Shown in pieces: positions 7,374 through 56,546 of a stretch of DNA of 64,000 nucleotides. Every line of letters begins with the position of its first letter. Position 1 is the first letter of the stretch. The stretch spans positions 171,430,001 to 171,494,000 of the forward strand of contig NC_042999.1 in assembly GCF_006345805.1 (NCBI RefSeq). Reading direction: 5' to 3'. The DNA comes from Octopus sinensis. Lineage: Eukaryota. The position numbers were made by a program, and so were the translations under genes. The notes beneath the pieces are model-generated. The model saw only the letters and a program-made list of their open reading frames with translations, ran no database searches and was not told where the DNA came from.

Positions 7374-10300
7374 TTGTCAGGTCTCCGCTTGGAGCTACTG
7401 GTAACATGTAACCCAGTACAACCTGTTACATGGTCGGGTCGTTGGCGACTAAACTGGCAACCCCACCAAGATTTCTTGGTGAGGAGGGTGATTTGGACAC
7501 CCAGCAGGACTAAAAACAAAACTTGTCAAAGGGCAGAGGAACTCTCTCATGAGTCAATGGCCATCCAAAATCCGGAGTGGAGCCCCTAAGGCGGTTGGAT
7601 TGCGCCATGCGTGCCACCTTCCGGCAGCTCCTGCATCTTGGTCTACCCCCAGTCGTTTTGACTTTGTCTTGCCACTGGATCCGGCGCACCAGGACGAGAG
7701 AGTGAGGCTGATCCTGCGCAAGTCACCCTCACTATAATCCAATTCACGCGCATGTCACGACATCATGACGTCATGACACCATCCCAAAGTCCTGTGGCGA
7801 TGGGGAAACGGCGAAGTAGCAGGTGAGGATACACTGGGAGCTGCAGTCGTGAACCCACACACAGGCGGCTCAGGACATGTGGTCGCCCCTCACTGAACTG
7901 AGGCAGCAGTGAAGTCCGGCAGCCTCCTGAGTGACCGAACAGCCCTCTTCAGGATCGCTCTGCTCGCCTCCCCAGCATGAGGACGGGGCTAGAAAAGGTT
8001 GCCCTAAACATAGCCTGCCTCACCTCACCCGGGTCAGCAAACCGCGGCTGGCGGGGATCCTTTCCAAGCGGTCGAAACAAAGAAAGAAGAAAACAAACAA
8101 AGGTGCTCACTTTTGCAACTTGGAACGTGAGAACTCTGCTTGACAACACCAAAGCGGACAGACCAGAGAGACGAACTGCCCTGGTGGCCAGAGAACTGAG
8201 CCGATACAACGTCGATATTGCAGCACTGAGCGAGACCCGCCTTGCAGACAAAGGCCAGCTGACAGAGACAGGCGGCGGCTACACTTTCTTTTGGAGTGGT
8301 CGCAGCAGGGAAGAGCGTCGTGAGGCTGGTGTTGGTTTTGCCATTAAGTCAGTACACGTGCGGAAACTGGAAAGGCCCCCCGAGGGTATCAACGATCGGC
8401 TGATGAAGATGCAGCTCCCACTTGGAAACAAGACTAGTGCGACCATCATCAGTGCTTACGCCCCCACCATGACCAACCCTGAAGAAGTTAAGGACAGGTT
8501 CTATGAGGAACTCAACTCCCTCATCACGTCAGCCCAGCCTGGGAAGCTCATCCTCCTTGGGGATTTTAACGCCCGTGTCGTGACTGACCACCAAGCCTGG
8601 CATCGCGTACTGGGAAAGCAAGGAATCGGAAAGTGCAACAGCAACGGACAGCTCCTCCTGCGTGCGTGTGCCTCTCATGATCTTACCATCGCCAACACCT
8701 TGTTCCGTCTGCCAACAAGCAACAAGACATCATGGATGCATCCACGCTCCAAACACTGGCATCTGATAGATTACGTCATCGTCAGGGCGAAAGACAGGCG
8801 GGACGTGAGACTGGTCAAAGCCATGTGCGGAGCTGACTGCTGGACGGACCATCGCCTCATCATCTCCAGGATGGATTTCTACATCCGACCTAAAAGAAGA
8901 CCACAGGGTCAGAAAGTGACGAGGAAGCTTAACATCACGAAATTAAAGAACCAGCTGACTGCACAAGATCTCCAGTCACGTATGGACAGCAAGCTGTTGG
9001 ACATTCGGAGTACACTGAGCAGTGGGAATCATTCAGGGACACGGTTCATTCCATCGCCCTTGAAACTCTGGGCCAAGTTACGAGGAACCACCAAGACTGG
9101 TTCGACGAAAACGACCAGGAAATCCAAAAGCTCCTGGAAGAGAAACGTCGTCTGCTGCGGGCTCACCAAAATGACACCACCTGCACGGCAAAGAAGGCCG
9201 CTTTCAACAACATTCGCAGCACAGTCCAGGCTAAACTCCGCCTCATGCAAGACGCATGGTTAAGCGCCAAGGCGGATGAGATTCAGGGATACGCAGACAA
9301 ACACGACACCAAGAAATTCTACGAGGCGCTAAAAGCTGTCTATGGACCGCAGTTCTCCTTTGGATCAACCCCCCTGCTCAGCTCGGATGGAACCTCACTC
9401 CTGACTAACAAGAGGCTGATCCTGGAGAGATGGGCGGAGCATTTCAACATCGTGCTCAACCGACCAGCCCAGATCAACGAGGAAGCCATCGCACGACTCC
9501 CCCAGGTGCCGACAAACCACGAGTTGGCTGTTCCCCCTGCAGTCGAGGAAGTGAGTAGAGCCATCAAAAAAATGTCCACCGGCAAAGCTCCAGGCTCTGA
9601 CGCCATCCCTGCAGAGGTGTTCAAGTCGGGCGGCCCCACCATGATCAGTCAGCTCACCAGCCTGTTCCAGTCGATGTGGGACAGGGAACAACTCCCTCAA
9701 GATTTCCGGGACGCAACAATCGTCCACAATTATAAGCGGAAAGGAGATCGGCAGTCCTGCGATAACCACCGAGGTATCTCCCTCTTGTCCATAGCATGCA
9801 AGATCCTGGCCCGGGTCCTGCTTGACCGCCTTCTGGAACACTTGGAGCAAGGCCTTCTCCCTGAGAGCCAGTGTGGCTTCCGCGCGGGTCGAGGGACCAC
9901 TGACATGATATTCGCCGCCCGCCAGCTCCAGGAGAAATGCATGGAGCAGCACCTTGACCTCTGCATGACCTTTGTTGACCTCACCAAGGCCTTTGATACA
10001 GTCAGTCGGGAGGGACTATGGAAGGTCATGGGAAAATTTGGTTGCCCCAGCAAATTTATTGCAATTGTCCGCCAGTTCCACGACGGAATGACAGCCAGAG
10101 TCCTTGAAGACGGCAACTCATCTGAAGCCTTCCAGGTGACCAACGGAGTCAGGCAGGGCTGTGTCCTGGCCCCAACACTGTTCAGCATCATGTTCTCGGC
10201 AATGCTGTCCGACGCCTTTAGGGACTGCAAGTCCGGTATCGACATCAAGTACAGGACAGACGGGAAACTTTTCAACTCCAGAAGATTGCAGGCTGTCACA

Positions 10301-11332
10301 AAGGTGAGGGAGACAGTCGTCAGAGACTTTCTCTTTGCTGACGACTGCGCCCTTAATGCAATCGATGAGCAGGAGATGCAGCTCGAGATGGACAGGTTCT
10401 CATCAGCCTGTGACAACTTCGGTCTCACCATCAGTGCCAAGAAAACCGAAGTGATGTTTCAGCCAGCCCCCGGCAAACAATACCATGAGCCTCAGATAAG
10501 GGTGAACGGATGGATCCTACGAGTGGTGGAAAACTTCACCTACCTGGGCAGCACTCTCTCCTGCAATGCCAACATAGATGCTGAAACCATCAACAGAATC
10601 TCCAAGGCAAGCAGCGCGTTTGGGAGACTGCGAAAGAAAGTCTGGGAGCAGAGAGGAATCAGCCTCAACACCAAGCTGAAAGTCTACCGGGCAGTCGTGC
10701 TTACCACCCTACTATACGGCTGCGAGACGTGGACTGCTTACCGAAGGCACGAGCGCCAGATAAACCACTTCCATCTCAGGTGTCTTCGGAGCCTCCTTCA
10801 CATCCGCTGGCAGGACAAAGTCCCAGACACGGAAGTTCTGAAGCAGGCAGATCTCCCTAGCACCATCACAATCATGCGCAAGGCCCAGCTGAGATGGGCG
10901 GGCCACGTCTCCCGCATGTCCGGCACTCGCATCCCAAAACAGCTTTTCTAAGGTGAACTCGGCCAGGGCAGGCGCAGAGTCGGAGGGCAGAAGAAGCGCT
11001 ACAAGGATAGTCTCAAGGTCTCTCTCAAAGACTTCTCCATCGGAACAGAGACCTGGGAGACACTTGCTGCCAACCGCTCATCCTGGCGCAGTGCAATCAC
11101 CGTGGGAGCAGGGACAGCCGAGGAGGGACGGATTCGGTCAGCGGAGCAGAAACGTCAGATGCGTAAAGCCAGAGCCGCCTGCACCAGTAGCACGGCCCCT
11201 ACCCACTTCTGCCCCACCTGTGGGAGGGGCTTCCTTGCCCGGATTGGCCTCACCAGCCACCTCAGGTCTCATGGCGGCAGTTCCATCAGACGATGTCAGT
11301 TGGTCATCTTCGAACCGAAGGACGAACATTAA
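7374..11332 (+). mobile_element. Near-full-length young RTE-clade LINE (~4 kb)
   Basis: GC-rich block in AT-rich DNA, with a ~600-nt 5' UTR and one APE-RT reading frame. Candidate 8-bp TSD ATGTATTT at 7366-7373 and 11336-11343. Confidence 0.95.
7977..11332 (+). pseudogene. RTE pol: APE endonuclease, reverse transcriptase and C-terminal C2H2 zinc finger, with one frameshift and one nonsense codon
   Basis: APE motifs TWNVRTL, LSETR, GVGFAI, SAYAPT, LGDFNARV, IDYV, TDHRL. RT motifs NHRGISLL, QCGFR, FVDLTKAFD, GVRQGCVLAP, FADD, YLGS. Frameshift near 9010-9020 (the alternative frame gives EQWESFRD..HQDWFDEND). TAA at 10949-10951 where QLFYGEL is expected; the same frame continues to CPTCGRGFLARIGLTSHLRSH and stops at 11332. 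Confidence 0.95.
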
Positions 11333-13843: not shown

Positions 13844-16800
13844 CAGGGGCGTGCACTCTCAGCAATGCAAGGTATGCGCTGCATGCCTTCCTTGTTTCAA
13901 AGAAAATACGTCCAGTTGTTTTAGAAATATTGTCTCCACTTCGTACATCTGCTTTGATAAATGCTTTTAGAAGATCGCATGATACACACTCCCTCTCTGT
14001 CTGTATTAGTTTGTCCTTCCTTCCTCTCTCTCTCTCTCTCTATCTTAGTGACTCGATAAATTTATCGCTTGTCATGCGTTGGGAAGACAGCATGAGTCCC
14101 TTCTCTCTGTCTTTGATAGTTTGTCCCTTCTCCCTCTTTCTTTCTTTAAAAGATATACTACGAGGAATGGTCACCCCCTTCTCTCTCAGCGATTCGACAA
14201 ATTCAGTTTGGCGTGTCATGCTGTGCTTAGATCGCATATCACGCCTCTGGCTATTTTGACCGGAACACGAGCCGTCCCATAATTCTTGTTTTAGCCAGCT
14301 GAAATGTTGGAATAGCCTTCGCATGTAAGTTTGAAATTTTTTATCCAAAACATCCGTTTGCACTATCATATTTTTAGAAAGTTTTGAAAGCAAAAATATC
14401 TACATTATATTTCTTATTTCAGAAATAGCTAATTAATCTTAAATTAATTTAACAAAGGGTATTTTTCCGTTTTGTTGAAATTGACTTAAAATTTACGCCG
14501 GCGCTTCCACGTGGGTCCTTAAATAAGAGCAGCCTTTTTAAAAATGAGTGAAATGTGTGCTATAAACGATATTTTGAGAACTAGTTTTTCTAAAAGGGAC
14601 TTCGATGGGAAAAAATTAATTATAAATCGCGGGAGACCAACACCGAATTTACCTAATTTGCGAAGCTACAACAAGAAATTCACGAGACAATTTCAGGTTA
14701 ATTCGTATGAAAAGAAGAAATGGTTAACTGGAAGTGTTGCTCTTAATAAATTATTCTGTTGGCCGTGTTTAGTTTTTGGCTTAGAAAAAAATGTTTGGAA
14801 TGATAAAGGCTATGATGATTTAAATAATTTACATATGGCTATGCTAAAGCACGAGCGTTCTCAAAGGCATATAAAATGTTTGATAGACCTTAAAATATTC
14901 GGGAATGTTCGCATAGACTTACAATTAGATGCACGTAAAAATCAAAGCATACAACAGCATAATGAGAAAGTTCGACGAAACAGATCCATTCTGCAACGAT
15001 TGATCGATGTTGTTATTTTTTTAGGCCTCCAGGAATTATCGTTTCGGGGTCATTTTGAATCTGAAGGCTCTAATAATCGGGGAAATTATAAAGAACTCGT
15101 TTATTTGATCAGTAAGTATGACAAACAAATGGAAAGTCATTTAGATACAGCTTCTATCTTCACTGGTCTGTCGAACAGAATTCAAAATGACTTGATCGAA
15201 GCAATTCATAAAGTTATGTTGAATGAGATGCAGAAGGAAATTGACCAAGCTAAGTTTGTTTCTATTCTTGTTGATGAGACATCTGATGTCTCAGCATCTT
15301 CACAACTGTCAACAGTTTTACGTTATGTTACAGAAGACTGTGTGACGAAAGAACGATTTATCGGTTTTAGTGATGTTAGTGCAGATCGATCTGCAAATGC
15401 TTTATCTGAACATGTTTTTAAATGCATTGAGACGTGGGAATGTGGAAACAAATTGATTGCGCAGACATATGATGGTGCCGCTACAATGGCAGGACAACTA
15501 AATGGGTTACAGGCAAAAGTAAGAAAGAAATATGAATGTGCGATCTTTATTCATTGTTGTGCCCATATCCTAAATTTAGTTCTTTCACAATCATGCTCTG
15601 CTATGAAAGAATGCAAGATATTTTTTTCTACAATAAATGGACTCGGTACATTTTTTACGAAATCACCGAAAAGGACTAATGCATTAGATAATATTGTTAA
15701 AAAAAGATTTCCGAAAGCAACAGCAACTAGATGGAATTACTCCTCACGTCTTATTATTACCACAAAGGAAAATTATAATTTCATAATCAGCCTTTTTGAA
15801 CACATCATTGAAAATCCTGAAGCATGGGATGAGACCACCATAAATTCAGCAATTGGATTCTTACACATTTTAAAAGCTCCTGATTTCTTATTTTTGTTAG
15901 AGGTATTCAGTGACATTTTTTCTTTTACTGACGTCTTATTTAACATACTCCAGAGTAAAAGTCATGACATAGTGTATTGTAAACAGCAAATAGATAAAAC
16001 TAGAACTGTACTCGAAAACAAACTTGATAATTTTTCAGTCTTTTATGATAGGTTAGGGGAAAAATATGGAGTCGATGCAGGAATCGGAATTCAGAGATCC
16101 AAGAATATATCTATTGATCCCCAACGACATTATAGAACGCTTTATAACAAAATTATAAGTACAATAGTTGACCAAATAAAAGCACGATATTCATCCTTAG
16201 AAGAGTTTAAATTCATGGAACTTTTGAATTTCAACAAAGTTGATGAGTATTGCAAACAATTTCCTGTGGACTCTTTAGATTCTTTAAGAACAACTTATGG
16301 CAGATTTTTTGATGTAATACGATTACAAAGTGAGCTCAATGTGATGTATTCAATGAAAGATTTTAAAAAACCAAGTGTAAGTCATTTAATGAGTTACATT
16401 AACAGCACTGATCTTGTTGAAGCTATGCCAGAACTCTTCAATCTGTGCAAGTTGATTTTGACAATTCCGTCTACAACTGCTTCTGTAGAGCGATCCTTTT
16501 CTGCATTAAGTAGAATTAAAACATACCAAAGAAATGCGACAGGAGAAAGAAGACTGTCTGGGTTAGCACTAATGTCAATTGAAAAAGATTTATTACAAGA
16601 ATTGATGAAAAGAGAAGATTTCTATGAAAATGTGATAGATATATTTGCCCAGAAAGATCGAAGAATTGAATTAATTTATAAATGAGCTAAGTAACATTTT
16701 AAAACATTAAAAAAAATATATATTAAAGAGCATATATTACAGGTTTTGCTTAGTGTTTGTTATAACGTAAGGTTCGACCTTCTTACATCAGTATTGTTTC

Positions 16801-33714: not shown

Positions 33715-36492
33715 TGTCCTGGTGTTGGATAAATAACTTAACGAAATCGGGTAAAAGGAAGTATTCATACAACGTACTACAATTACTGTTACACGAGTTT
33801 AAATGCTTTCTGCCGAGATCTCTTTATTTTATAGCCACGTTTCAGTCCACTTCTAGTCACATATTGAGGACGGAATCTTCCAACATCTCTCATTTTAGAA
33901 TTGAGGTACTAACACCCAAACAATTTGAAACTACACTTTGTAGCAGCAGAAACCGGAAAAGAACGGAAATACTGGGATTGGGCTCTAAGCGTAAGAGATA
34001 TTAAAACTCTGAGAGGAGTTTAATTTTCAAAAAGGATGCCTTTTTTTACCTATATATAGAGAATAACGGACGTCGACGAGTCTGTAGTTGAAAACTTCTA
34101 CCGTGTAAACATGAATGAATTTTTTTTTACGGCAAAAATAATTACTAGTTCCAATTTTTCGATTTGGCTGTAATTTTTTCTGCTTATATCAGAGAACGTG
34201 AGGCATGAACAACCGCCTTCATGTTACTTATGTAGCATTACTGCTCCTATACCGTACTCACAGTCATCAGAAGCTGCTCCAATCTCCAACACAGGGTCGA
34301 ATTGTGCTAACGATAAATCAGATGTTGATATTCTTTTTTAAAATTTCCTCGAACTGCTTCTGACAATTTTCGGAATAATTCAACTTTATATCCTTTTTAA
34401 TTGATTATTTAATGAAATTCTGTTTTTATGCATATACGGAATATAATTTTGGTAATAATTTTCCAGTCTCCAAAATGCTTGTAAAGTCGCTATATTTGTG
34501 GGAAGGGGATCTGGTCGGCGTTCATTTCTCTAAATGATTTGTCCTAAATATTCTATTTTCGGTAAGAAAATTTAACACTTTTCTTCACTCAAAGTAAAGT
34601 CGTAATCCCTAACTTTTGCGAACACATATCTTATAGGCTCTACGTGTTGTTCCTGGGATTCTCTTATTATGAGTATATCATCCAGAAATAGTATTGCAAA
34701 TTCGCAGTCCGCTAACATTGCATCTATGATCTGTTGAAAATTTTCCGGTCCGTCTTTTAAGCGAAATAGTAAGCTGTTGTATTTATATAGTTCTTAATGT
34801 ATGTTAATTATTGGGTATTTAGAGCATCCATCGTCTACTTTAATTTGTAAGTATGTGTCAGAAAGATCCATTAAAAAAAATATCTTACCACCGTTTAATT
34901 TCACAGAAATATCCTCCGAGGTAGGTAGCAGATAGTGGCACTTTTAAGACGTTCGTTTAAACCTGTGGAAAATTTGCACGCACACACTGATTTCATTATT
35001 CATTTTCTTAACGTACACAGTCGGAGATGGTCATTGACTATATTCCACTTATTGGATAACACCATCTTTGTTCCAGTCTCTCTAAGATTATCTGTTCTAA
35101 CGCTGCGAATGGCACCGTTCGTTTTGGTTTAAATACCGCCGCAGCATTTCCTTTTACTTGAAACTTCGCCTTTGTTTTGGCGTACAGACCTAATTCATCA
35201 AACTGAACTTCAGGAAAAATCTTTTTTTGATTGTTTTTCTTTAATTCGTCAGACGACTTATTTGTATTGGCGGAAAAACCATTTACATTTTTACAGAAAA
35301 TATTTATGAGGAGGTTCCATAACTTAAATCATTCGATCCAGTCTGTTCCGAATATATTTGTCGTATTACTCAACACAAAAACATGGGTTTTTCAGATTTT
35401 TCTACAAAAAGTAACGTCACTTATCAATTCACCCTTAGAATGTGCAATTTTCAGTTTCTTTTAATCTAGGTCTCCCGATTTCCCCCCATGTATCTGTATT
35501 AAAAATCAAAATATCACTTCCTGTATCCAATTATAACTTGACGTTTGTGGTATTGATTTTTACATGCACTAATTCATCTCCTACTGCCAGTAGAGTTAAT
35601 TTTTAGTCCTGTTCTAATTTTGTTAATATCCAGGAACATATATCTGCATGTTTGCTTGTAGTAAGCCCTTGAACAAAAATTAAAACATTTGAACATGTCC
35701 GGGATTAATTCATATAATTTGAATTTTTCAAATTAACATTTCCGGCATATGTGACTAAATGTTGATCATCTTTTTTGACCAAATTTAAACACTGTCAGCG
35801 AGTATTCAATAAGGAACTTCTTTCACTGAAAACGTTTCATAAAAATATACGTTTTATCGAAACAAATCTTACCTTGTCTCCTCGGCAGAATATACTTGGT
35901 ATATTTTTCGTGTTCGGCACGGGATAACTATCTTAAAAGTAGTCATACTTTTTTCTTGTCAGATCAGTTCTTATATTCTTCCTTGAAGATTTCTTCGCAT
36001 CTCCGAAAAGGTAGTTCCTTCTGGTTTATAGCTGAATTCTTCAACAGAGTTTGCTACGCTGTCTGGTAAGTAGGAACCTGAAGTGTTTTCAGACTTCGTC
36101 AACATTAATTCTAACACCTGTTTGTTTTTGTTGTTGTTGTTGTTGCTGTTGTAGTTGCTGTAGTTGCTGTAGTTGCTGTTGCAGTTGCAGTTGTAGTCGC
36201 TGTTATTGCTGTTGTAGTTGCTGTTATTGTAGCTGCTGAGGCTGTTGCACCACGGATGCCAGTAAATCTTCCATGTTAAATTGAATTTTTTTTGGTTTCG
36301 TAGTAAAAAAAATTAATTAACCATCCAACGGACGGTTTGAAAAACTCGCCGTCACTTTTATATCCTGGTTTTGAATAAAATATTTAACGAAGCAGGGGGG
36401 AACGATACTTTTCACACGACGCACTACGATTACTCTTACACGAGGCTAAACGTTCTCTACCAACGGTTCACAGTGAACTGCTTAATCTGAAC
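33715..36492 (-). mobile_element. Decayed Ty3/Gypsy LTR retrotransposon (gag, protease, RT), internally deleted, both LTRs partly recognisable
   Basis: Minus strand: polyQ-rich gag start (~36120-36275), LDTGSDI protease (~35515-35545), LPTSEDISVKLNGGKIF..DLSDTYLQ, QQIIDAMLADCEFAILFLDDILI (RT), PLPTNIATLQA. Direct repeats at 33715-33810 and 36361-36460 (t.tcctgg..ataaa..ttaacgaa..ctac.attact.ttacacgag). PBS-like GTGACGGCGAG next to the 36361 copy. Confidence 0.85.
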
Positions 36493-37067
36493 AGTTGAAA
36501 GTTTTTTATTGTATAGCAATATGCCAGTTTACACTCAGTTACACATACACACACCACACATACACACGCACATACACATACACAAACACACACATATATT
36601 GAGAGAGAGAGAGAGAGGGGGGAGAGAGAGAGATGCATTTCGCTCCTGGCTGTCTTTGTGTTCGAGTAATTATTTATGCCTATGAACCTGCCTGTATGCG
36701 TAATGCGGTATCAAAATCTACATATATAAAGATGATGAGAAACAATTAAAAAGTTAATAATGTAGGGTCATTTAGCAATTATGTGTTTATGTATGTGTTT
36801 ATGTACATAGGCGCATGTCTGTCTATCTATCTACTACCTATCAATCTATCTACATATCAATCTATGTACCTATCTATCTGTTTACTACCTATCAATCTAT
36901 CTACCTATCTATCTATCTATCTATCTATATGCATATATATATATGCATATATATACCAAATTAATAAATAAAACATATGCATATATACATACATATATGT
37001 GCGTACCTACATCTACATGTATATATACATGCATATATGGGTAAAGGACTTCTAAGTAAGTTTGTTC

Positions 37068-37109
<42 letters not shown>

Positions 37110-37221
37110 CATGTGTGTGTTGGTATGCGTGTGTATGTGTGCGTGTGTACGAATATCTTTCTGCATACAATATATATATGCATGTATATATGTAATTATA
37201 GACAGTTTATCAGTGTTTATT

Positions 37222-37227
37222 TTTATT
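37222..37227 (-). promoter_or_regulatory. Candidate polyadenylation signal (AATAAA) of ALT-like copy 1
   Basis: Lies ~50 nt past the stop codon and is conserved at the equivalent position in copy 2 (50383-50388). Confidence 0.5.
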
Positions 37228-37274
37228 GAAAAGTATTTATAACAACATAAATGCTTAGAGTAAAACAATTACTT

Positions 37275-38603
37275 TTAAGCAATCAAAGATTGTATAAATT
37301 TTTGATGAAATTGTCTTATTTTCTCCAGTTGCTCATGGAGTGTTATTTGATCGAGTGGAAATGTATATTTAAAATGCATACTGTCAGGATTTTCACCAAA
37401 GACTTTACCAGGAACAACATAAATACCTGTAGTTGCGTATAGTTCACAGCAGTAATTTTCCTCGAGATCCAAAGCCTCATTTTCATCAGTAATCCACCGA
37501 CTTGGAAACAGTAATTTAGGAAAAGCACAATGGCCAGCAAATACCTGGCTGCAACTCATATAAGGCTGTAAGTTAAAAAAGTCAACGGTAATTTCAGCTA
37601 AATTTCCGAGTAGTTCTATGAAGTTGTGTCTTTCATTTTCGAATTTTGTAAATGAAGGGTATTTTCTTACATATTTTGGTGCTAGAAAAAGACTTAAATA
37701 GATTTGATGGACAGTAGCCGCGGAAGTAAAGGTAAGGGTGCCGAATTTTGTGGTCAACTTATCCATTCGTAAGCTATCAATGTAACTTATCTGCATACTT
37801 TTGTCACCCTGTGGACTTCGAGCTAATGAAAACAAACACATTAATTGCACAGATTTGTAAATTTCATCCTTTTGTATGAGTGCTTTCCTGGATGATAAAA
37901 ATTTGTTTTTTCTATAAACATCCATTTGTAAATTTTCTATTGCTATAAGCACAATGCCATGATTTTTGGCCACACGGAAAAATATCTCCAGTTCTTTTTC
38001 CGAATATAGGTGACCTGTTGGATATCCCGGATTCTCCAAAAATATACAATTTATCTTGCAATGAGATCCTTCTAGAGCTTTCACAAGTGCTTCTTCTTCA
38101 ATTGTCCATTGATCAGCAGCTTCTGTCAGATAATAGGGGACAGGCAAAAACCCACATATTTCGACTGCTTCCTGAATAATAGGCGATGAGGGATAAGGAA
38201 TTAGAATACCATAACCACTATTCATATGAGCACCTATGAAAAATTTTAAGATACTATTCAATAATGACCATTCATTATTTTCAATGAGAACCTCTTCGTC
38301 TTGTTCCAGATTTAAGGTACCATCTCGTTCTAAAATGTAATTTGTGACATCCTTTCTTGTGAACGGCAGACCGATAGTCTTCGAATAAGTGCCAACACCA
38401 TTTCCTGAAAAATTGCTTAAGTAATGATTTGCCAGTTGTTTTGCATCATCAGAAAACTTAAAAGATTCCGAAAGATCTGAATATATGCAGAGTACGATGA
38501 TCTCGTTTAAATAACTGTATTGAATGTAATCCTCCGTTTGCAGAATAGTATCAAATTTCACTCTCTTTTCAAAGCATCTCTCTTTCTGAGCAACGGAATC
38601 CAT
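37275..38603 (-). CDS. Alanine aminotransferase (GPT/ALT)-derived protein, copy 1; single exon, 442 aa, predicted catalytically dead
   Basis: Colinear with the ALT family end to end: LCIYSDL, GVGTYS..G..RKDV..YILERDG, GILIPYP, YYLTE..W, NPGYPTG, F.S.RKAL, EENYCCELYATTGIYVVPGKVFG, HFKYTFP, FHQKF. The ORF-track start at 38633 is TTG; the first ATG (MDSV) is at 38603. The PLP-lysine position is Arg (codon CGA, 37818-37820). Confidence 0.9.
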   Translation of the reverse strand: MDSVAQKERCFEKRVKFDTILQTEDYIQYSYLNEIIVLCIYSDLSESFKFSDDAKQLANHYLSNFSGNGVGTYSKTIGLPFTRKDVTNYILERDGTLNLEQDEEVLIENNEWSLLNSILKFFIGAHMNSGYGILIPYPSSPIIQEAVEICGFLPVPYYLTEAADQWTIEEEALVKALEGSHCKINCIFLENPGYPTGHLYSEKELEIFFRVAKNHGIVLIAIENLQMDVYRKNKFLSSRKALIQKDEIYKSVQLMCLFSLARSPQGDKSMQISYIDSLRMDKLTTKFGTLTFTSAATVHQIYLSLFLAPKYVRKYPSFTKFENERHNFIELLGNLAEITVDFFNLQPYMSCSQVFAGHCAFPKLLFPSRWITDENEALDLEENYCCELYATTGIYVVPGKVFGENPDSMHFKYTFPLDQITLHEQLEKIRQFHQKFIQSLIA

Positions 38604-39164
38604 AATGTAAAGCAGTTTAATGATACACTCCAAATTTAGGTAGTTAAAATAGCTCCAATAGGTATATTAATTTGTTTGTTATTAGTGTAAAATATTCTCT
38701 TAATTTCAGCCGTCTTAATTTCAGTCTTATCTTTTACTAGATGCCCTACTGAAATATCTCTGACATCGTTCCTCTATAGGCATGTTATATTCATGCTTTA
38801 CTAGTTTATTTCAAGATAAATGCATGTTTACACAGGTTAACAAAGTTCAATGTATTCTCGAGCAGCTGTGTGGTTACTTATCAATAAATGATAACGAAAA
38901 AACAATTGCCAAATACAAATCATAAATAGATAAGTAGATAAAGAGAAAACAATATTCGAACTAGGCAGAAATATGTACACCTCTTACATTGTCATTAAAA
39001 TTCGTCACGTAAGCGATGTTTACAAACCTGAGAGGTCAAAAACCGCAAAGTATTGAAATAAATCAGCAGTATGCTTATCACATGACACTTAAAGTATTCG
39101 CTCTGGATATAATTTATGAACTTAAACTGTTTCTCATCATAGCCTAAAACTATATATATATATA

Positions 39165-39350
<186 letters not shown>

Positions 39351-42589: not shown

Positions 42590-42974
42590 GATGGGGCCCA
42601 GTTAGAATTTTCTTCTGCTCGAGTAGCCCATCCCGCTCAAAAGGTCCCTGATTAAGGATTTTTAAGGATGTTGAACGAACAACCTATGTTTCCAAAGGTG
42701 AATTATCCAAACCTCCAGGAATTCCTTTCAACACACGGCTACGATACTCCCCCACTACTTCTGCTCATGATCAGAGATGCATATATTATCAGCCACTAAG
42801 GGACATGATCAACTGGTTATGGTCAAACAACTGACAAGCAAATCTGTGGTATTGAGCAGAATATCTGCTATAGCCCATCTTTTATTCCAAGACGAAACAA
42901 TGTACATGATAACACTTCCACTCAGTTAAGATCAGAAGCCATGGGAGCCACTGTCTGGTATTGCATCAGGGCAT

Positions 42975-47860: not shown

Positions 47861-48330
47861 GAGTGAGAGAGCAGTGCATGCCATGAAAGTGACAGCGGGG
47901 TAAAATATACAAATCCAAGTATACACATCATGACTACCCGTCTGATAAGGGTACACCAGGCACATGCATCACAACCATATCTGCGCGACATGGTGATCTC
48001 ATACCAAGATAAACAGCACATGATCTTGCAGGTGGGGCCCAATTAGAATTTTCTTCTGGTCGAGTAACCCATCCCGCTCAAAAATGTCTCTGAAGTATTG
48101 TTTAAGGATGTTGAACGAACCACCCATGTTTCCAAAGGTGAATTATCCAAACTTCCAAGAATTCCTTTCAACACATGGCTATGATGCTCCCCCACTACTT
48201 CTGCTCATGATCAGAGATGCACATATCGTCAGCCACTAAGGGATATGGTCAACTTGTTAAGGTCAAACAACTGACAAGCAATTCTGTGGTATTGAGCAGA
48301 ATATTTGCTTTAGCCCATCTTTTATACCAT
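47860..48330. repeat. Interspersed repeat A copy
   Basis: Aligns with 31399-32040. Confidence 0.8.
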
Positions 48331-50382: not shown

Positions 50383-50388
50383 TTTATT
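50383..50388 (-). promoter_or_regulatory. Candidate polyadenylation signal (AATAAA) of ALT-like copy 2
   Basis: Same position relative to the stop codon as in copy 1. Confidence 0.5.
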
Positions 50389-50435: not shown

Positions 50436-51764
50436 TTAAGCAATCAAAGATTGTATAAATTTTTGATGAAATTGTCTTATTTTCTCCAGTTGCTCATGGA
50501 GTGTTATTTGATCGAGTGGAAATGTAAATTTAAAATGCATACTGTCAGGATTTTCACCAAAGACTTTACCAGGAACAACATAAATACCTGTAGTTGCGTA
50601 TAGTTCACAGCAGTAATTTTCCTCGAGATCCAAAGCCTCATTTTCATCAGTAATCCACCGACTTGGAAACAGTAATTTAGGAAAAGCACAATGGCCAGCA
50701 AATACCTGGCTGCAACTCATATAAGGCTGTAAGTTAAAAAAGTCAACGGTAATTTCAGCTAAATTTCCGAGTAGTTCTATGAAGTTGTGTCTTTCATTTT
50801 CGAATTTTGTAAATGAAGGGTATTTTCTTACATATTTTGGTGCTAGAAAAAGACTTAAGTAGATTTGATGAATAGAAGCTGGGGAAGTAAAGGTAAGGTT
50901 GCCGTATGTTGTGGTCAACTTATCCATTCGTAAGCTATCAATGTAACTTATCTGCATACCTTTGTCACCCTGTGGACTTCGAGCTGACGAAAACAAGCAC
51001 ATTAATTGCACGGATTTGTAAATTTCATCCTTTTGTATGAGTGCTTTCCTGGATGATAAAAATTTGTTTTTTCTATAAACATCCATTTGTAAATTTTCTA
51101 TTGCTATAAGCACAATGCCATGATTTTTGGCCACACGGAAAAATATCTCCAGTTCTTTTTCCGAATATAGGTGACCTGTTGGATATCCCGGATTCTCCAA
51201 AAATATACAATGTATCTTGCAATGAGATCCTTCTAGAGCTTTCACAAGTGCTTCTTCTTCAATTGTCCATTGATCAGCAGCTTCTGTCAGATAATAGGGG
51301 ACAGGCAAAAACCCACATATTTCGACTGCTTCCTGAATAATAGGTGATGAGGGATAAGGAATTAGAATACCATAACCACTATTCATATGAGCACCTATGA
51401 AAAATTCTAAGATATTATTCAATAATGACCCTTCATTCGTGTCAACGAGAACCTCTTCATCTTCTTCTATATTCAAGGCACCATCTCGCTCTAAAATATA
51501 ATCTACGACATCCTTTCTTATGAAATCATCGCCAATGGTCTCCGAATAAATGCCAACACCATTTCCTGCAAAATTACTTAAGTAATGTTTTGCCAGTTGT
51601 TTTGCCTCATCAGAAAAGTTACTAGATACTAAAAGATCTGAATTTAAGCAGAGCACGATGATCTCCTTTAAATAACTATATTGAATATTATCCTCCATTT
51701 GCAGGATAGTATCAAATTTCGATCTGTGTTCAAAGTACTTCTCTTTCTGAGAAACAGAATCCAT
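50436..51764 (-). CDS. Alanine aminotransferase (GPT/ALT)-derived protein, copy 2; single exon, 442 aa, predicted catalytically dead
   Basis: EIIVLCLNSDLLVSSNFSDEAK..GIYS..G..IRKDVVDYILERDG aligns with ALT QVLALCVNPDLLSSPNFPDDAK..GAYS..G..IREDVARYIERRDG, and the rest is colinear. The ORF-track start at 51827 is TTG; the first ATG is at 51764. The PLP-lysine position is Arg (CGA, 50979-50981). Confidence 0.9.
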   Translation of the reverse strand: MDSVSQKEKYFEHRSKFDTILQMEDNIQYSYLKEIIVLCLNSDLLVSSNFSDEAKQLAKHYLSNFAGNGVGIYSETIGDDFIRKDVVDYILERDGALNIEEDEEVLVDTNEGSLLNNILEFFIGAHMNSGYGILIPYPSSPIIQEAVEICGFLPVPYYLTEAADQWTIEEEALVKALEGSHCKIHCIFLENPGYPTGHLYSEKELEIFFRVAKNHGIVLIAIENLQMDVYRKNKFLSSRKALIQKDEIYKSVQLMCLFSSARSPQGDKGMQISYIDSLRMDKLTTTYGNLTFTSPASIHQIYLSLFLAPKYVRKYPSFTKFENERHNFIELLGNLAEITVDFFNLQPYMSCSQVFAGHCAFPKLLFPSRWITDENEALDLEENYCCELYATTGIYVVPGKVFGENPDSMHFKFTFPLDQITLHEQLEKIRQFHQKFIQSLIA

Positions 51765-52123
51765 GATGTAGGAAGTTCCAATCGCCCGACCAGTTGCTGT
51801 AATGTATTTGTTAAAATATTCTCCCAATTTCAGTCTTATCTCTTACGAGATTTTGTACTGAAATAAATCTTTGACGCCGTTCCTTCTTGGGCGTTTTATA
51901 TATATGCGTTGATATTTTATTCATGTTTAAAGCGGTTAATAATGCATAATGTATTCTCGAGCAGGGGTGTGGGTACTTATCACAAAAGCATGATACGACA
52001 AAACAATTTTCGAATCAAGCAGTATCTACCTCTTACACTGCCAATAAGATTCGTCACGTATACACAAACACACACACATACCTGTATGTATATATATATA
52101 GATATATATATATATATATTTAT

Positions 52124-55500: not shown

Positions 55501-55879
55501 AGGAAACATGACTGATGAGAGAAAATTGCGAATGATTGGTCCTTGTTTTTTTCCTGTCCGTTCTTGTATCGTCAATATGTCCGGATCTCTGATTGTCTAC
55601 TGTTGCGTTCTTGTTCCATTTTAGGGATATATATATATACATAAACAGAGGATAGATGGATAAATTTGTCACCATGGGTTGGTTTTGATTCTATCGACTC
55701 ACACACAGTATATTAGGGTCAGTTAATCTCACCATCTGTGAGAAAAACAGCAGCGTGAAACAATTCACTCTGCAAGAAATTTCGAAACCACATACTGTAC
55801 TACTTGGTATTCGGGCTGGAAGATTCAATATCAACAGATGGTGAACGCACAGAACAAACGTTCGTTTGCCCTGTCGTCA

Positions 55880-56270
55880 AAACGTGTACTGAGAGTGTTC
55901 ATAAAATATGCAGTTAAGATCATTGTGTTTGGAGTGATTACTAGTGATTGCAGCGTTACCCCTCCTCTCATTTTCCCACACTGCCTCATACTCAACAAGG
56001 AGGCCTACATCAAGTCCCTGGAAGAGGTAGTACTGCCCTGGGTCAGGAGGGCGTCTGCTGGAAGACCCTATATCTGGCAACAGGACTCTGCACCATGCCA
56101 CACTGCCAGGAGAACCCAGTCGAGTGTGTCAGACAATTTTTGGGACTACATAATCCATAACATCTGGCCACATAATCCTCCAGACTGCACCTACTTGATT
56201 ATCATGTGTCGTGCGCAATTGAGCGACAGACAAAGAACACTCCATGTAATACTAAAGATGAACTCTCAGA
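55880..56270 (+). mobile_element. Tc1/mariner (maT-like) transposase fragment
   Basis: IVFGVITSD..PPLIFP...LNKEAYI..LE.VVLPW...GRPYIWQQDSAPCHT..TQ...NIWP.N.PDC. Confidence 0.8.
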
Positions 56271-56546
56271 TTGTATTACCTTCTAGCCTTAGTGTATTCC
56301 GATTTTAGCCTGGTGCTGGCGCGATAGGGGAGTGCCTGAAATATGTATACACACACACACACTCACACACACAGATATATATATATAATATATATCTATA
56401 TATACACATGTATATATACATACATATATACTTATGTACATACACATACATACATTTATATATCCACACATATACATGTAAATACATGTATATATGCTTA
56501 TATATATGTATATATATATATATACATACACACACACACACATACA

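What the first reader, a model, noticed from the sequence alone, without database searches (positions are those of the whole stretch)
37700..38400. The residue ALT donates to its partner subunit is kept while same-subunit cofactor residues are lost
Seen: the GxYS tyrosine is retained in both copies (GTYS, GIYS). The paralogs differ around it (GTYSKTIGLPF vs GIYSETIGDDF) and in the segment after the former catalytic Lys (TTKFGTLTFTSAATV vs TTTYGNLTFTSPASI). Established: in fold-type-I dimers Tyr70* and the ~292-297 segment come from the neighbouring subunit and complete the active site. Inference: these proteins could heterodimerise with a catalytically competent aminotransferase, completing, retuning or inhibiting its active site, with each paralog offering a different donated surface.
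Basis: inference. Interest (0 to 1): 0.72.

Follow-up and report, generated by a model that had tools for sequence, protein, structure and literature searches.

The report
Dead alanine-aminotransferase gene pair in octopus

Summary
The window is Octopus DNA. It carries two intronless tandem genes on the minus strand (par1 38603..37275, par2 51764..50436), each 442 aa. Their best solved relative is human ALT2 (E 6e-46), and the AlphaFold model has pLDDT 90.6.

All nine family sequences found keep the GxY tyrosine. These come from three Octopus species and three distant relatives at 35-44% identity. All have lost the same-subunit cofactor and substrate ligands (N194Y, D222I/S/L, Y225L, K258R, R266Q/H/S, R386K). 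They also lack about 40-50 N-terminal residues present in ALT.

Orthologue dN/dS is 0.34-0.40, so these are constrained pseudoenzymes, not pseudogenes.

Codons 1-120 and about 260-298 keep paralogue identity in two species. The middle and C-terminus are homogenised within each species.

Heterodimerisation with active ALT could not be tested. The tyrosine is one of 20 of 48 ALT-invariant residues kept. The 284-298 segment is among the least conserved. No positive selection is seen. Self-association, including par1/par2 dimers, is the more economical reading.

It is an undescribed pseudo-ALT family, currently annotated as "alanine aminotransferase 1".

The parts
37275..38603 (-). par1: intronless 442-aa ALT-derived pseudoenzyme gene (ATG 38603, stop 37275-37277)
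   Evidence: ORF. Pfam PF00155. 3IHJ human ALT2 E 6e-46. AF2 pLDDT 90.6 with Foldseek top hit 3IHJ at TM 0.82. The exact protein is in databases as a 442-aa model.
50436..51764 (-). par2: tandem paralogue, 442 aa, 90% aa / 93% nt identical to par1, 13.2 kb upstream in the direction of transcription
   Evidence: The same order and spacing are seen in O. bimaculoides.
38358..38402 (-). par1 Tyr loop NGVGTYSKTIGLPFT (codons 68-82); Tyr73 = 38385-38387, the equivalent of Tyr70* of aspartate aminotransferase
51519..51563 (-). par2 Tyr loop NGVGIYSETIGDDFI; Tyr73 = 51546-51548
38013..38033 (-). par1 NPGYPTG (ALT: NPGNPTG); the Asn194-equivalent is replaced by Tyr, invariant in the family. The par2 copy is at 51174-51194.
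37926..37943 (-). par1 AIENLQ (ALT: ADEVYQ); Asp222 -> Ile and Tyr225 -> Leu. The par2 copy is at 51087-51104.
37812..37829 (-). par1 SLARSP (ALT: S-x-S-K-G); the former Schiff-base Lys is Arg262 (37818-37820). par2 has SSARSP at 50973-50990.
37710..37754 (-). par1 segment TTKFGTLTFTSAATV (codons 284-298): helix end, loop and helix start that correspond to the partner-donated ~292 region. par2 has TTTYGNLTFTSPASI at 50871-50915.
   Evidence: T289N and A295P are paralogue-specific in two species. This is the least conserved stretch in the family.
37368..37376 (-). par1 HFK (ALT: HFR); the alpha-carboxylate-binding Arg386-equivalent is Lys, invariant in the family. The par2 copy is at 50529-50537.
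37852..38245 (-). Gene-conversion tract 1 (CDS nt ~359-752): 2 differences between par1 and par2; 17 species-specific sites shared by both paralogues and 0 orthology-pattern sites in nt 396-767
   Evidence: (paralogue dS 0.02 versus orthologue dS 0.16-0.19)
37275..37697 (-). Gene-conversion tract 2 (CDS nt 907-1329): 1 difference; contains the longest identical run, 331 nt (0 of 100,000 permutations matched it)
38604..39010 (-). par1 upstream region with blocks conserved between both paralogues and both species (ACGTGACGAAT, GATAAGTA, CTGCTCGAGAATACAT, TATTTCAGTA, GAGAATATTTTA); a candidate promoter and 5' leader. The par2 equivalent is 51765-52059.
   Evidence: Function is inferred only.
37222..37227 (-). 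AATAAA polyadenylation-signal-like hexamer 47 nt after the par1 stop codon. The par2 copy is at 50383-50388. Paralogue homology ends about 165 nt after the stop.

Best explanation
The two ORFs are tandem members of a small, old, lineage-restricted family of ALT-derived pseudoenzymes.

Shown:
- They are intronless, which suggests descent from a processed ALT transcript.
- They start about 40-50 residues later than ALT.
- They keep the complete fold-type-I architecture.
- Every same-subunit ligand of pyridoxal phosphate and of the substrate carboxylate has been replaced. Several replacements (Tyr194, Asn224, Leu225, Asp228, Ser263, Lys412) have stayed fixed across 35-44% sequence divergence.
- They evolve under moderate purifying selection.
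- In Octopus the pair undergoes continuing gene conversion that homogenises the central large-domain core and the C-terminal domain. The first 120 codons and codons ~260-298 have stayed paralogue-specific since before the split of O. bimaculoides from the window's species.

Inferred:
- The proteins no longer bind PLP or transaminate.
- They still dimerise through the conserved aminotransferase interface, as homodimers and probably as par1/par2 heterodimers. The two proteins are 90% identical, and conversion keeps identical the central region that contributes much of the fold-type-I subunit interface.
- In such dimers Tyr73 and segment 284-298 of one chain line the remodelled, more open cleft of the other chain. 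That cleft would now serve as a non-catalytic binding site for a small molecule or a protein.
- The paralogue-specific residues around it (72, 75, 79-82, 108, 112, 260, 289, 295) would give up to three dimer species with slightly different clefts.

On this reading the retained tyrosine is a scaffold or cleft residue of the family's own dimer, not a part lent to active ALT.
For: - Homology and fold: PF00155; 3IHJ 6e-46 over residues 39-448; AF2 pLDDT 90.6 and pTM 0.90; Foldseek top hits 3IHJ (TM 0.82) and 3TCM.
- Dead site in all 9 sequences, tyrosine kept. 0/9 cofactor ligands kept against 20/48 invariants overall, p = 0.004.
- The family is distinct from canonical ALT. In a scan of 1.84 billion representatives the scores fall from E 2e-87 (last member) to 8e-46 (first ALT). 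Only octopus, Logan and ENA members were found among 5.8 billion proteins.
- Intronless in three genomes. No other ALT-like exon lies in the 64-kb window. In-frame stops precede the ATG in a relative. Family members have 13-26 residues before the first conserved helix, against a median of 66 in ALTs.
- Constraint: orthologue dN/dS is 0.34 and 0.40. ORFs are intact in three Octopus species. Block 181-240 is the most conserved part of the family (25/60 versus 76/368 invariant columns, p = 0.0009).
- Gene conversion: orthology-pattern versus concerted-pattern sites are 25:3 in nt 1-358, 0:17 in nt 396-767, 4:3 in nt 779-885 and 0:4 in nt 901-1048. The paralogue dS is 0.29 at the N-terminus and 0.01-0.02 in the tracts. 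The longest identical run is 331 nt. O. vulgaris par1 still carries V146/H165 where the window's par1 has the par2 residues.
- Upstream blocks shared by both paralogues and both species suggest similar regulation.
- Precedent for an inactive ALT paralogue that is a homodimer: ScAlt2 (PMC5960717).
Against: - Dimerisation, loss of PLP binding and the existence of any ligand are inferred, not shown.
- The new pocket residues are invariant at about the background rate of the family (8 of 28 changed ALT invariants against 23.6% of all columns). High conservation of block 181-240 may reflect only the folding core.
- Loss of the N-terminal arm could weaken any dimer.
- One member (P0007) still has Lys at the Schiff-base position, so residual chemistry in part of the family is not excluded.
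- No expression or tissue data for the octopus genes were available. Transcription is suggested only indirectly, by roughly 1.4-1.5-kb Logan contigs with staggered 5' ends from a series of runs for a relative.
- The shared conversion boundaries could result from sequence divergence blocking conversion rather than from selection.
Confidence: 0.5

Rival explanations
1. par1 and par2 heterodimerise with the species' active ALT. The dead chain supplies Tyr73* and segment 284-298* to the one functional site of the heterodimer. This completes, retunes or lowers activity, and the two paralogues give different effects.
For: The tyrosine is invariant in all family members while all same-subunit ligands are lost. 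Paralogue-specific residues flank the tyrosine loop and the 284-298 segment and have been kept apart in two species despite conversion elsewhere. Shared active sites allow complementation between chains in the related ACC synthases (PMC5258695). Dead paralogues that activate their live partner exist (PMC5201418, PMC3663545).
Against: Identity to canonical ALTs is only about 20-27% in the multiple alignment, and the N-terminal 40-50 residues are absent. Enzymatically active ACS heterodimers form only within the same phylogenetic branch (PMC5258695). The tyrosine is kept no more often than other scaffold invariants, and it is also kept in 11 other Lys-less ALT-like proteins. Segment 284-298 is poorly conserved across the family, whereas a part that must fit a highly conserved ALT site should be constrained. 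dN/dS is 0.4-0.55 with no significant excess of replacements. The paralogue differences also affect same-subunit pocket elements and the disordered N-terminus. There is no direct test.
Confidence: 0.12
2. Scaffold-only reading. The tyrosine and its Gly-rich loop are kept only because they are needed for folding and packing of the fold-type-I core. The paralogue differences are weakly constrained drift in the tracts that gene conversion does not reach. The protein's function (structural, abundant-protein or protein-binding) does not involve the former active-site cleft.
For: 20/48 ALT invariants are kept, most of them Gly, Pro or aromatic scaffold residues (G71, G78, P136, P138, P141, Y157, W166, P192, P195, G197, G399, F402). 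dN/dS is higher in the N-terminal tract (0.41-0.55) than in the centre (0.24-0.25). The new pocket residues are not more conserved than background. Three of the 15 fixed paralogue differences lie in the disordered first 19 residues.
Against: The same conversion boundaries in two species, and the persistence of T289N, A295P and L260S inside an otherwise homogenised half of the gene, hint at selection to keep the differences. Block 181-240, which carries the former cofactor ligands, is the most conserved part of the family (p = 0.0009).
Confidence: 0.3
3. The ORFs are non-functional relics (processed pseudogenes) or annotation artefacts.
For: They are intronless, flanked by microsatellites and transposons, and have a dead active site.
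Against: Full-length ORFs are intact in three Octopus species for both paralogues and in three relatives at 35-44% identity. dN/dS is 0.34-0.40. Upstream blocks and an AATAAA hexamer are conserved. The AF2 model is confident.
Confidence: 0.03

Closest known systems
Animal alanine aminotransferase (GPT/ALT1, GPT2/ALT2; human ALT2 structure 3IHJ; barley AlaAT 3TCM)
   Same: Clear homologue over the whole fold (E 6e-46, Foldseek TM 0.82). It keeps the GxY tyrosine loop, the RDG, PxPxxP and NPGxPTG scaffolds, E223/Q226, and the C-terminal GxxFG and HF(R/K) motifs.
   Different: It lacks the Schiff-base Lys (Arg in 8 of 9 sequences), Asn194, Asp222, Tyr225, Arg266, the phosphate-loop Gly and Arg386. 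It lacks the N-terminal ~40-50 residues that carry the YAVRG and NIGxxQ motifs. It is intronless and lineage-restricted.
Saccharomyces cerevisiae Alt2, the inactive paralogue of Alt1 (PMC3458083, PMC5483587, PMC5960717)
   Same: An ALT paralogue without alanine aminotransferase activity that has been retained after duplication. It is dimeric.
   Different: ScAlt2 is 67% identical to Alt1, keeps all catalytic residues and still forms a PLP Schiff base (PMC5960717). The octopus family is about 20-27% identical to ALTs in the multiple alignment and has lost essentially every cofactor ligand, so the way it became inactive is different.
ACC synthase isozymes with shared active sites and heterodimers (reviewed in PMC5258695)
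   Same: The same fold-type-I subgroup; apple ACS is among the top structural matches. In ACS, residues from both chains build each site, so a chain that is dead by itself can in principle complement a partner.
   Different: [quoted passage not shown] The octopus proteins are far more diverged from any active enzyme, and no interaction is known.
Trypanosomatid prozymes, the dead paralogues of AdoMetDC and deoxyhypusine synthase (PMC5201418, PMC3663545)
   Same: A lineage-restricted, catalytically dead paralogue kept under selection.
   Different: The folds are unrelated. In those cases the heteromer and the activation were demonstrated biochemically. Here nothing is known about partners.
Other Lys-less 'ALT-like' proteins of vertebrates and a beetle found here (rays and skate, Albula, Chanos, Pleurodeles, Catharus, Puntigrus, Pholidichthys, Coccinella)
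   Same: ALT homologues without the Schiff-base Lys that keep the Tyr70-equivalent.
   Different: They keep the N-terminal segment, Arg266 and (all but one) Arg386, and most keep Asn194 and Asp222. They are separate from the octopus clade, scoring E 1e-42 or weaker against 1e-87 or stronger within the family.

Membership tests
Alanine aminotransferase (EC 2.6.1.2), class I/II aminotransferase | Fold-type-I aminotransferase fold with large and small domains | tested here: met
   PF00155; 3IHJ aligned over residues 39-448; AF2 pLDDT 90.6; Foldseek 3IHJ TM 0.82 and 3TCM TM 0.83
Alanine aminotransferase (EC 2.6.1.2), class I/II aminotransferase | Schiff-base lysine (S-x-S-K motif) | tested here: not met
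   Arg in 8 of 9 family sequences, Lys only in P0007. Among the other 82 aligned sequences, 70 have Lys.
Alanine aminotransferase (EC 2.6.1.2), class I/II aminotransferase | PLP ligands Asn194, Asp222, Tyr225, Arg266 and the phosphate-loop Gly | tested here: not met
   Replaced by Tyr, Ile/Ser/Leu, Leu, Gln/His/Ser and Asn/Arg respectively; Gly remains only in P0007
Alanine aminotransferase (EC 2.6.1.2), class I/II aminotransferase | Arg386-equivalent that binds the substrate alpha-carboxylate | tested here: not met
   Lys in all 8 sequences that cover the position
Alanine aminotransferase (EC 2.6.1.2), class I/II aminotransferase | N-terminal segment carrying the YAVRG and NIGxxQ motifs | tested here: not met
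   Absent. Family members have 13-26 residues before the first conserved helix against a median of 66. There is no such exon in the window, and stop codons lie upstream of the ATG in L006.
Alanine aminotransferase (EC 2.6.1.2), class I/II aminotransferase | Tyr70-equivalent donated to the partner subunit's phosphate site | tested here: met
   The residue is present in 9/9 aligned sequences and in both O. vulgaris orthologues. Whether it is donated to anything was not testable.
Prozyme-type pseudoenzyme (dead paralogue that regulates its active paralogue in a heteromer) | Catalytically dead paralogue kept under selection | tested here: met
Prozyme-type pseudoenzyme (dead paralogue that regulates its active paralogue in a heteromer) | Physical complex with the active enzyme | not testable with these tools
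   The structure tool predicts single chains only and gives no coordinates. No interaction data were available.
Prozyme-type pseudoenzyme (dead paralogue that regulates its active paralogue in a heteromer) | Change in the partner's activity | not testable with these tools
   Needs enzymology
ScAlt2-type inactive ALT | Catalytic residues and the PLP Schiff base retained although activity is lost | tested here: not met
   The ligands are lost. The ScAlt2 definition is taken from PMC5960717.
Processed (retro)gene | Uninterrupted coding sequence where the parent gene has introns | tested here: inconclusive
   The single-ORF state is shown in the window, O. bimaculoides and the ENA contig. The intron-containing structure of the octopus parent ALT gene was not examined here and rests on general knowledge of metazoan GPT genes. 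No poly(A) tract or target-site duplication is recognisable.
Tandem paralogues under gene conversion (concerted evolution) | Tracts where paralogues within a species are more alike than orthologues, next to tracts showing orthology | tested here: met
   Site patterns 25:3, 0:17, 4:3 and 0:4. The dS contrast is 0.29 versus 0.01-0.02. A 331-nt identical run was matched by 0 of 100,000 permutations.

The most novel reading that the evidence does not exclude
A cephalopod-type 'pro-ALT'. The dead chains pair with the animal's active alanine aminotransferase, and the two paralogues (kept different around the tyrosine loop and the 284-298 segment against continuing gene conversion) set the activity or amino-acid preference of the single remaining active site in a tissue-specific way. 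This would be the first natural pseudo-subunit regulator of a PLP fold-type-I enzyme in animals.
Probability: 0.12. Interest if true: 0.75.

Novelty: new variant of a known kind. Interest (0 to 1): 0.45.

Why it matters
Public databases label these proteins "alanine aminotransferase 1" or "glutamic-pyruvic transaminase", yet they cannot be PLP enzymes. Metabolic reconstructions and ALT-based physiology in octopus would therefore miscount them.

They add a clean case to the small set of PLP-fold pseudoenzymes. The cofactor site is fully dismantled and the N-terminus truncated, but the fold has been kept under selection over deep divergence.

The octopus pair is also a compact natural experiment. 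Gene conversion erases differences over about two thirds of the gene, while two short tracts near the former inter-subunit cleft stay distinct in two species. That pattern points to where function may lie and makes the dimer-partner question directly testable.

The side observation that Lys-less ALT-like paralogues are scattered through vertebrates suggests that dead ALTs are a recurrent and unstudied outcome of ALT duplication.

Tried and rejected
1. Taxon of the distant relatives. I searched the literature for SRR27666064 and ERZ21867824 (nothing). I then spent the last protein search on a LINE reverse-transcriptase fragment next to P0006, hoping for a named close hit. All best hits were unnamed copies from the same ENA assembly, so the host of P0004, P0006 and P0007 remains unknown. 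A cephalopod host is only a guess.
2. A profile search with the family alignment found no further members at E <= 1e-40.
3. The bacterial promoter/terminator scan is irrelevant for a eukaryotic locus and was ignored.
4. I looked for an upstream exon that could supply the missing ALT N-terminus. 32 ALT or ALT-like proteins were run by tblastn against the window and hit only the two ORFs. The sequence just upstream of the ATG differs between the paralogues by a 29-nt indel, which is not a multiple of 3. That possibility is rejected.
5. Positive selection on the variable tracts. Pairwise dN/dS is 0.4-0.55. The single value above 1 (1.97, codons 256-300, par2 orthologues) rests on 7 replacement changes against 1 silent change and is not significant.
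6. Enrichment of invariance at the replaced pocket residues. 8/28 against a 23.6% background is not enriched, so I do not claim it.
7. Literature on the specific octopus accessions: none found.
8. Pseudogene reading: rejected (see rival explanations).
9. Multimer modelling could not be attempted.
Full report
**What is at the locus**

The window is AT-rich animal DNA full of microsatellites and transposons. The finding's coordinates fall inside a 442-codon uninterrupted ORF on the minus strand (par1: ATG 38603, stop 37275-37277). A second copy lies 13.2 kb away on the same strand (par2: 51764..50436).

The exact proteins are in public collections on a 174-Mb chromosome. Their 90%-identity cluster also contains two Octopus vulgaris proteins. 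O. bimaculoides has the same two genes in the same order about 11 kb apart. All are annotated "alanine aminotransferase 1(-like)" or "glutamic-pyruvic transaminase".

The O. bimaculoides par1 gene model is short (272 aa). The open reading frame itself runs intact up to an assembly gap.

**Checking the observation**

Both quoted motif pairs are present exactly as written. The proteins match Pfam PF00155 and align with human ALT2 (PDB 3IHJ) from residue 39 to 448 at E 6e-46. An AlphaFold2 model built on a 90-sequence alignment is confident (pLDDT 90.6, pTM 0.90; only residues 1-19 are disordered). Its best structural matches are 3IHJ (TM 0.82) and barley AlaAT 3TCM.

In a 91-sequence alignment the former active site reads as follows in all nine family sequences:

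| Canonical residue | State in the family |
|---|---|
| Asn194 | Tyr |
| Asp222 | Ile, Ser or Leu |
| Tyr225 | Leu |
| Schiff-base Lys | Arg (Lys only in P0007) |
| Arg266 | Gln, His or Ser |
| Arg386 | Lys |
| Phosphate-loop Gly | lost (Gly only in P0007) |
| Tyr70-equivalent | Tyr in 9/9 |

Both O. vulgaris orthologues also keep the tyrosine.

**Is the retained tyrosine more than chance?**

Among 48 columns that are at least 90% conserved in 67 canonical ALTs, 20 are kept in every family member. None of the nine same-subunit cofactor or substrate ligands is kept (p = 0.004). The losses are thus targeted at the cofactor site, and the tyrosine is the one cofactor-contacting residue that escaped.

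However, about half of the other invariants also survived, mostly Gly, Pro and aromatic scaffold residues. Eleven other Lys-less ALT-like proteins found in the same search also keep this tyrosine. These come from rays and a skate, Albula, Chanos, Pleurodeles, Catharus, Puntigrus, Pholidichthys, Coccinella and two unnamed sources. Retention of the tyrosine is therefore compatible with a purely structural role.

**The family**

A scan of 1.84 billion representative proteins gave only three family clusters: octopus, P0006 (44% identity) and P0007 (36%). The score then drops from E 2e-87 to 8e-46 at the first canonical ALT. The word-indexed searches added P0004/P0155/P0156 (42%) and nothing else.

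P0006 and P0007 sit about 90 kb apart on one 205-kb ENA contig, and each is a single uninterrupted ORF. P0004 and its near-identical variants occur on 1.4-1.5-kb Logan contigs from a series of runs. Those contigs have staggered 5' ends and in-frame stop codons upstream of the ATG. I could not name the hosts.

All members start 13-26 residues before the first conserved helix, whereas ALTs have a median of 66 residues there. No ALT-like exon exists elsewhere in the window. The truncation removes the segment that carries the YAVRG and NIGxxQ motifs of the ALT consensus.

The intronless state in three genomes points to an origin from a processed transcript before the family diversified. This is an inference, because the parent gene's structure was not examined.

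**Selection**

Orthologue comparisons between the window's species and O. bimaculoides give dN/dS of 0.34 (par1) and 0.40 (par2). The centre scores about 0.24-0.25 and codons 1-120 score about 0.41-0.44. Reading frames are intact in three Octopus species and in relatives at 35-44% identity, so these are functional genes under moderate constraint.

Across four lineages 23.6% of columns are invariant. Block 181-240 is the most conserved part (25/60 versus 76/368, p = 0.0009). It carries ENPGYPTGH, A-x-ENLQ-x-D and FLS-x-RK. The segment 286-300 (1 of 15 columns invariant) and the N-terminus are the least conserved.

The replacement residues Y194, N224, L225, D228, S263 and K412 are invariant. As a class, though, replaced invariants are not more conserved than background (8/28), so I do not claim a demonstrably selected new pocket.

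**Why the paralogues differ where they do**

The 75 nucleotide differences between par1 and par2 are strongly clustered:

- 58 lie in nt 1-360.
- 14 lie in nt 751-906.
- 3 lie in the two near-identical stretches (nt 361-750 and 907-1329).

The longest identical run is 331 nt, and none of 100,000 permutations matched it.

Adding the two O. bimaculoides genes shows the cause:

| CDS region (nt) | Sites grouping by paralogue | Sites grouping by species |
|---|---|---|
| 1-358 | 25 | 3 |
| 396-767 | 0 | 17 |
| 779-885 | 4 | 3 |
| 901-1048 | 0 | 4 |

Synonymous divergence between the paralogues is 0.29 in the first tract. It is 0.01-0.02 in the homogenised tracts of the window's species and 0.03-0.08 in O. 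bimaculoides. Orthologue dS in the central region is 0.16-0.19.

So the duplication predates the species split. Gene conversion has since homogenised the centre and the C-terminus independently in both lineages. It is still going on: O. vulgaris par1 keeps V146/H165 where the window's par1 now has the par2 residues.

Fifteen amino-acid differences are fixed by paralogue in both species: 5, 9, 13, 23, 33, 41, 45, 46, 75, 82, 108, 120, 260, 289 and 295. Others sit next to same-subunit elements of the old site (108 and 112 by the phosphate loop, 260 by the former Lys) or in the disordered N-terminus.

The differences therefore ring the old cleft as a whole. They are not specific to the donated surface. 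No test shows positive selection. The recurrence of the same conversion boundaries in two lineages is compatible with selection keeping the tracts distinct. It is equally compatible with divergence itself blocking conversion.

**Mechanism**

What is shown is a folded, constrained, PLP-ligand-free ALT derivative, present as a tandem pair that exchanges sequence.

My preferred inference has four parts:

- The proteins still dimerise through the aminotransferase interface.
- They do so with themselves and with each other. They are 90% identical, conversion keeps the large-domain core identical, and conserved upstream blocks suggest similar regulation.
- Tyr73 and segment 284-298 then line the partner chain's remodelled, lid-less cleft.
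- That cleft serves as a non-catalytic binding site.

- Identity to ALT is low: 20-27% in the multiple alignment.
- The N-terminal segment is missing.
- The supposedly donated 284-298 segment is poorly conserved, although it would have to fit a very conserved site.

The inactive yeast ALT paralogue Alt2 is a homodimer, though it keeps its catalytic residues and still binds PLP (PMC5960717). Dead paralogues that activate live partners are documented only in unrelated folds (PMC5201418, PMC3663545). My estimate for it is about 0.12.

**Novelty and score**

I found no description of this family. It is a new variant of a known kind, an enzyme-derived pseudoenzyme. Three things set it apart: complete dismantling of the cofactor site, N-terminal truncation with an intronless gene structure, and a very narrow distribution. 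The mosaic of gene conversion around two persistent paralogue-specific tracts gives it some extra interest. Interest is moderate (0.45). It would be high only if the pro-ALT model proved true.

Noticed in passing
Proteins P0009, P0010, P0012, P0020, P0021, P0025, P0034, P0035, P0038, P0063, P0086 (not in the window): ALT-like proteins without the Schiff-base Lys (Arg, Ser, Asn, Gln, Phe, Asp or His instead) occur in rays and a skate (Hemitrygon, Hypanus, Leucoraja), Albula, Chanos, Puntigrus, Pholidichthys, the newt Pleurodeles, the thrush Catharus, the ladybird Coccinella and two unnamed sources. All keep the Tyr70-equivalent and Arg266, and all but one keep Arg386. They are annotated as ALT1/2-like. 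Dead ALT paralogues may be a recurrent, unstudied class. Some could be gene-model errors.
   Followed up: partly
P0007 / L005:10001-11302: The most divergent family member keeps Lys at the Schiff-base position, Gly in the phosphate loop and Tyr at the QYPLY position, but it has the family's other replacements (Y194, L222, L225, S271, K412). It may represent an earlier stage of decay or retain some chemistry. The ENA gene model reads through a TGA as Trp at its end; the ORF ends at ...MTMVK.
   Followed up: partly
L003:10001-11686 (O. bimaculoides CM046603.1): The par1 orthologue of O. bimaculoides is interrupted by an assembly gap (a run of N) after codon ~348. The RefSeq model XP_052822760.1 (272 aa) and the older 360-aa model are truncated or mis-spliced because of it. 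The readable part is intact.
   Followed up: yes
window 7977-10951 (+): A LINE with an apurinic-endonuclease ORF (PF03372/PF14529) overlapping a reverse-transcriptase ORF (PF00078). It forms a GC-rich island (0.49-0.54) in an otherwise ~0.33 GC window. Both ORFs are long and open, so it is possibly a young element.
   Followed up: partly
window 14544-16685 (+): An intact 713-aa ORF with DUF4371 and the hAT C-terminal dimerisation domain. It is either a hAT-type transposase or a domesticated derivative.
   Followed up: partly
window 42592-42889 and 48033-48329: A ~300-bp direct repeat (90% identity) lies in the spacer between the two genes. It is probably an interspersed repeat and was not examined further.
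   Followed up: no
window 36051-36239, 36780-37270, 38995-39350: Dense microsatellites ((TGC)n giving a poly-Cys ORF, (TA)n, (CA)n, (GATA)n) directly flank both genes. They mark the ends of the duplicated unit, which runs from ~300-400 nt upstream of the ATG to ~165 nt past the stop.
   Followed up: partly
window 38604-39010 and 51765-52059 (-): Short upstream blocks are identical in both paralogues and both species (ACGTGACGAAT, GATAAGTA, CTGCTCGAGAATACAT, TATTTCAGTA, GAGAATATTTTA), although the surrounding sequence carries indels. These are candidate regulatory elements. TATTTCAG could also be a splice acceptor of a 5'-UTR intron.
   Followed up: partly
window 55838-56308 (+): A 156-aa ORF whose sequence resembles the C-terminal part of a mariner/Tc1-type transposase by eye. 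It had no Pfam hit at E <= 0.001.
   Followed up: partly
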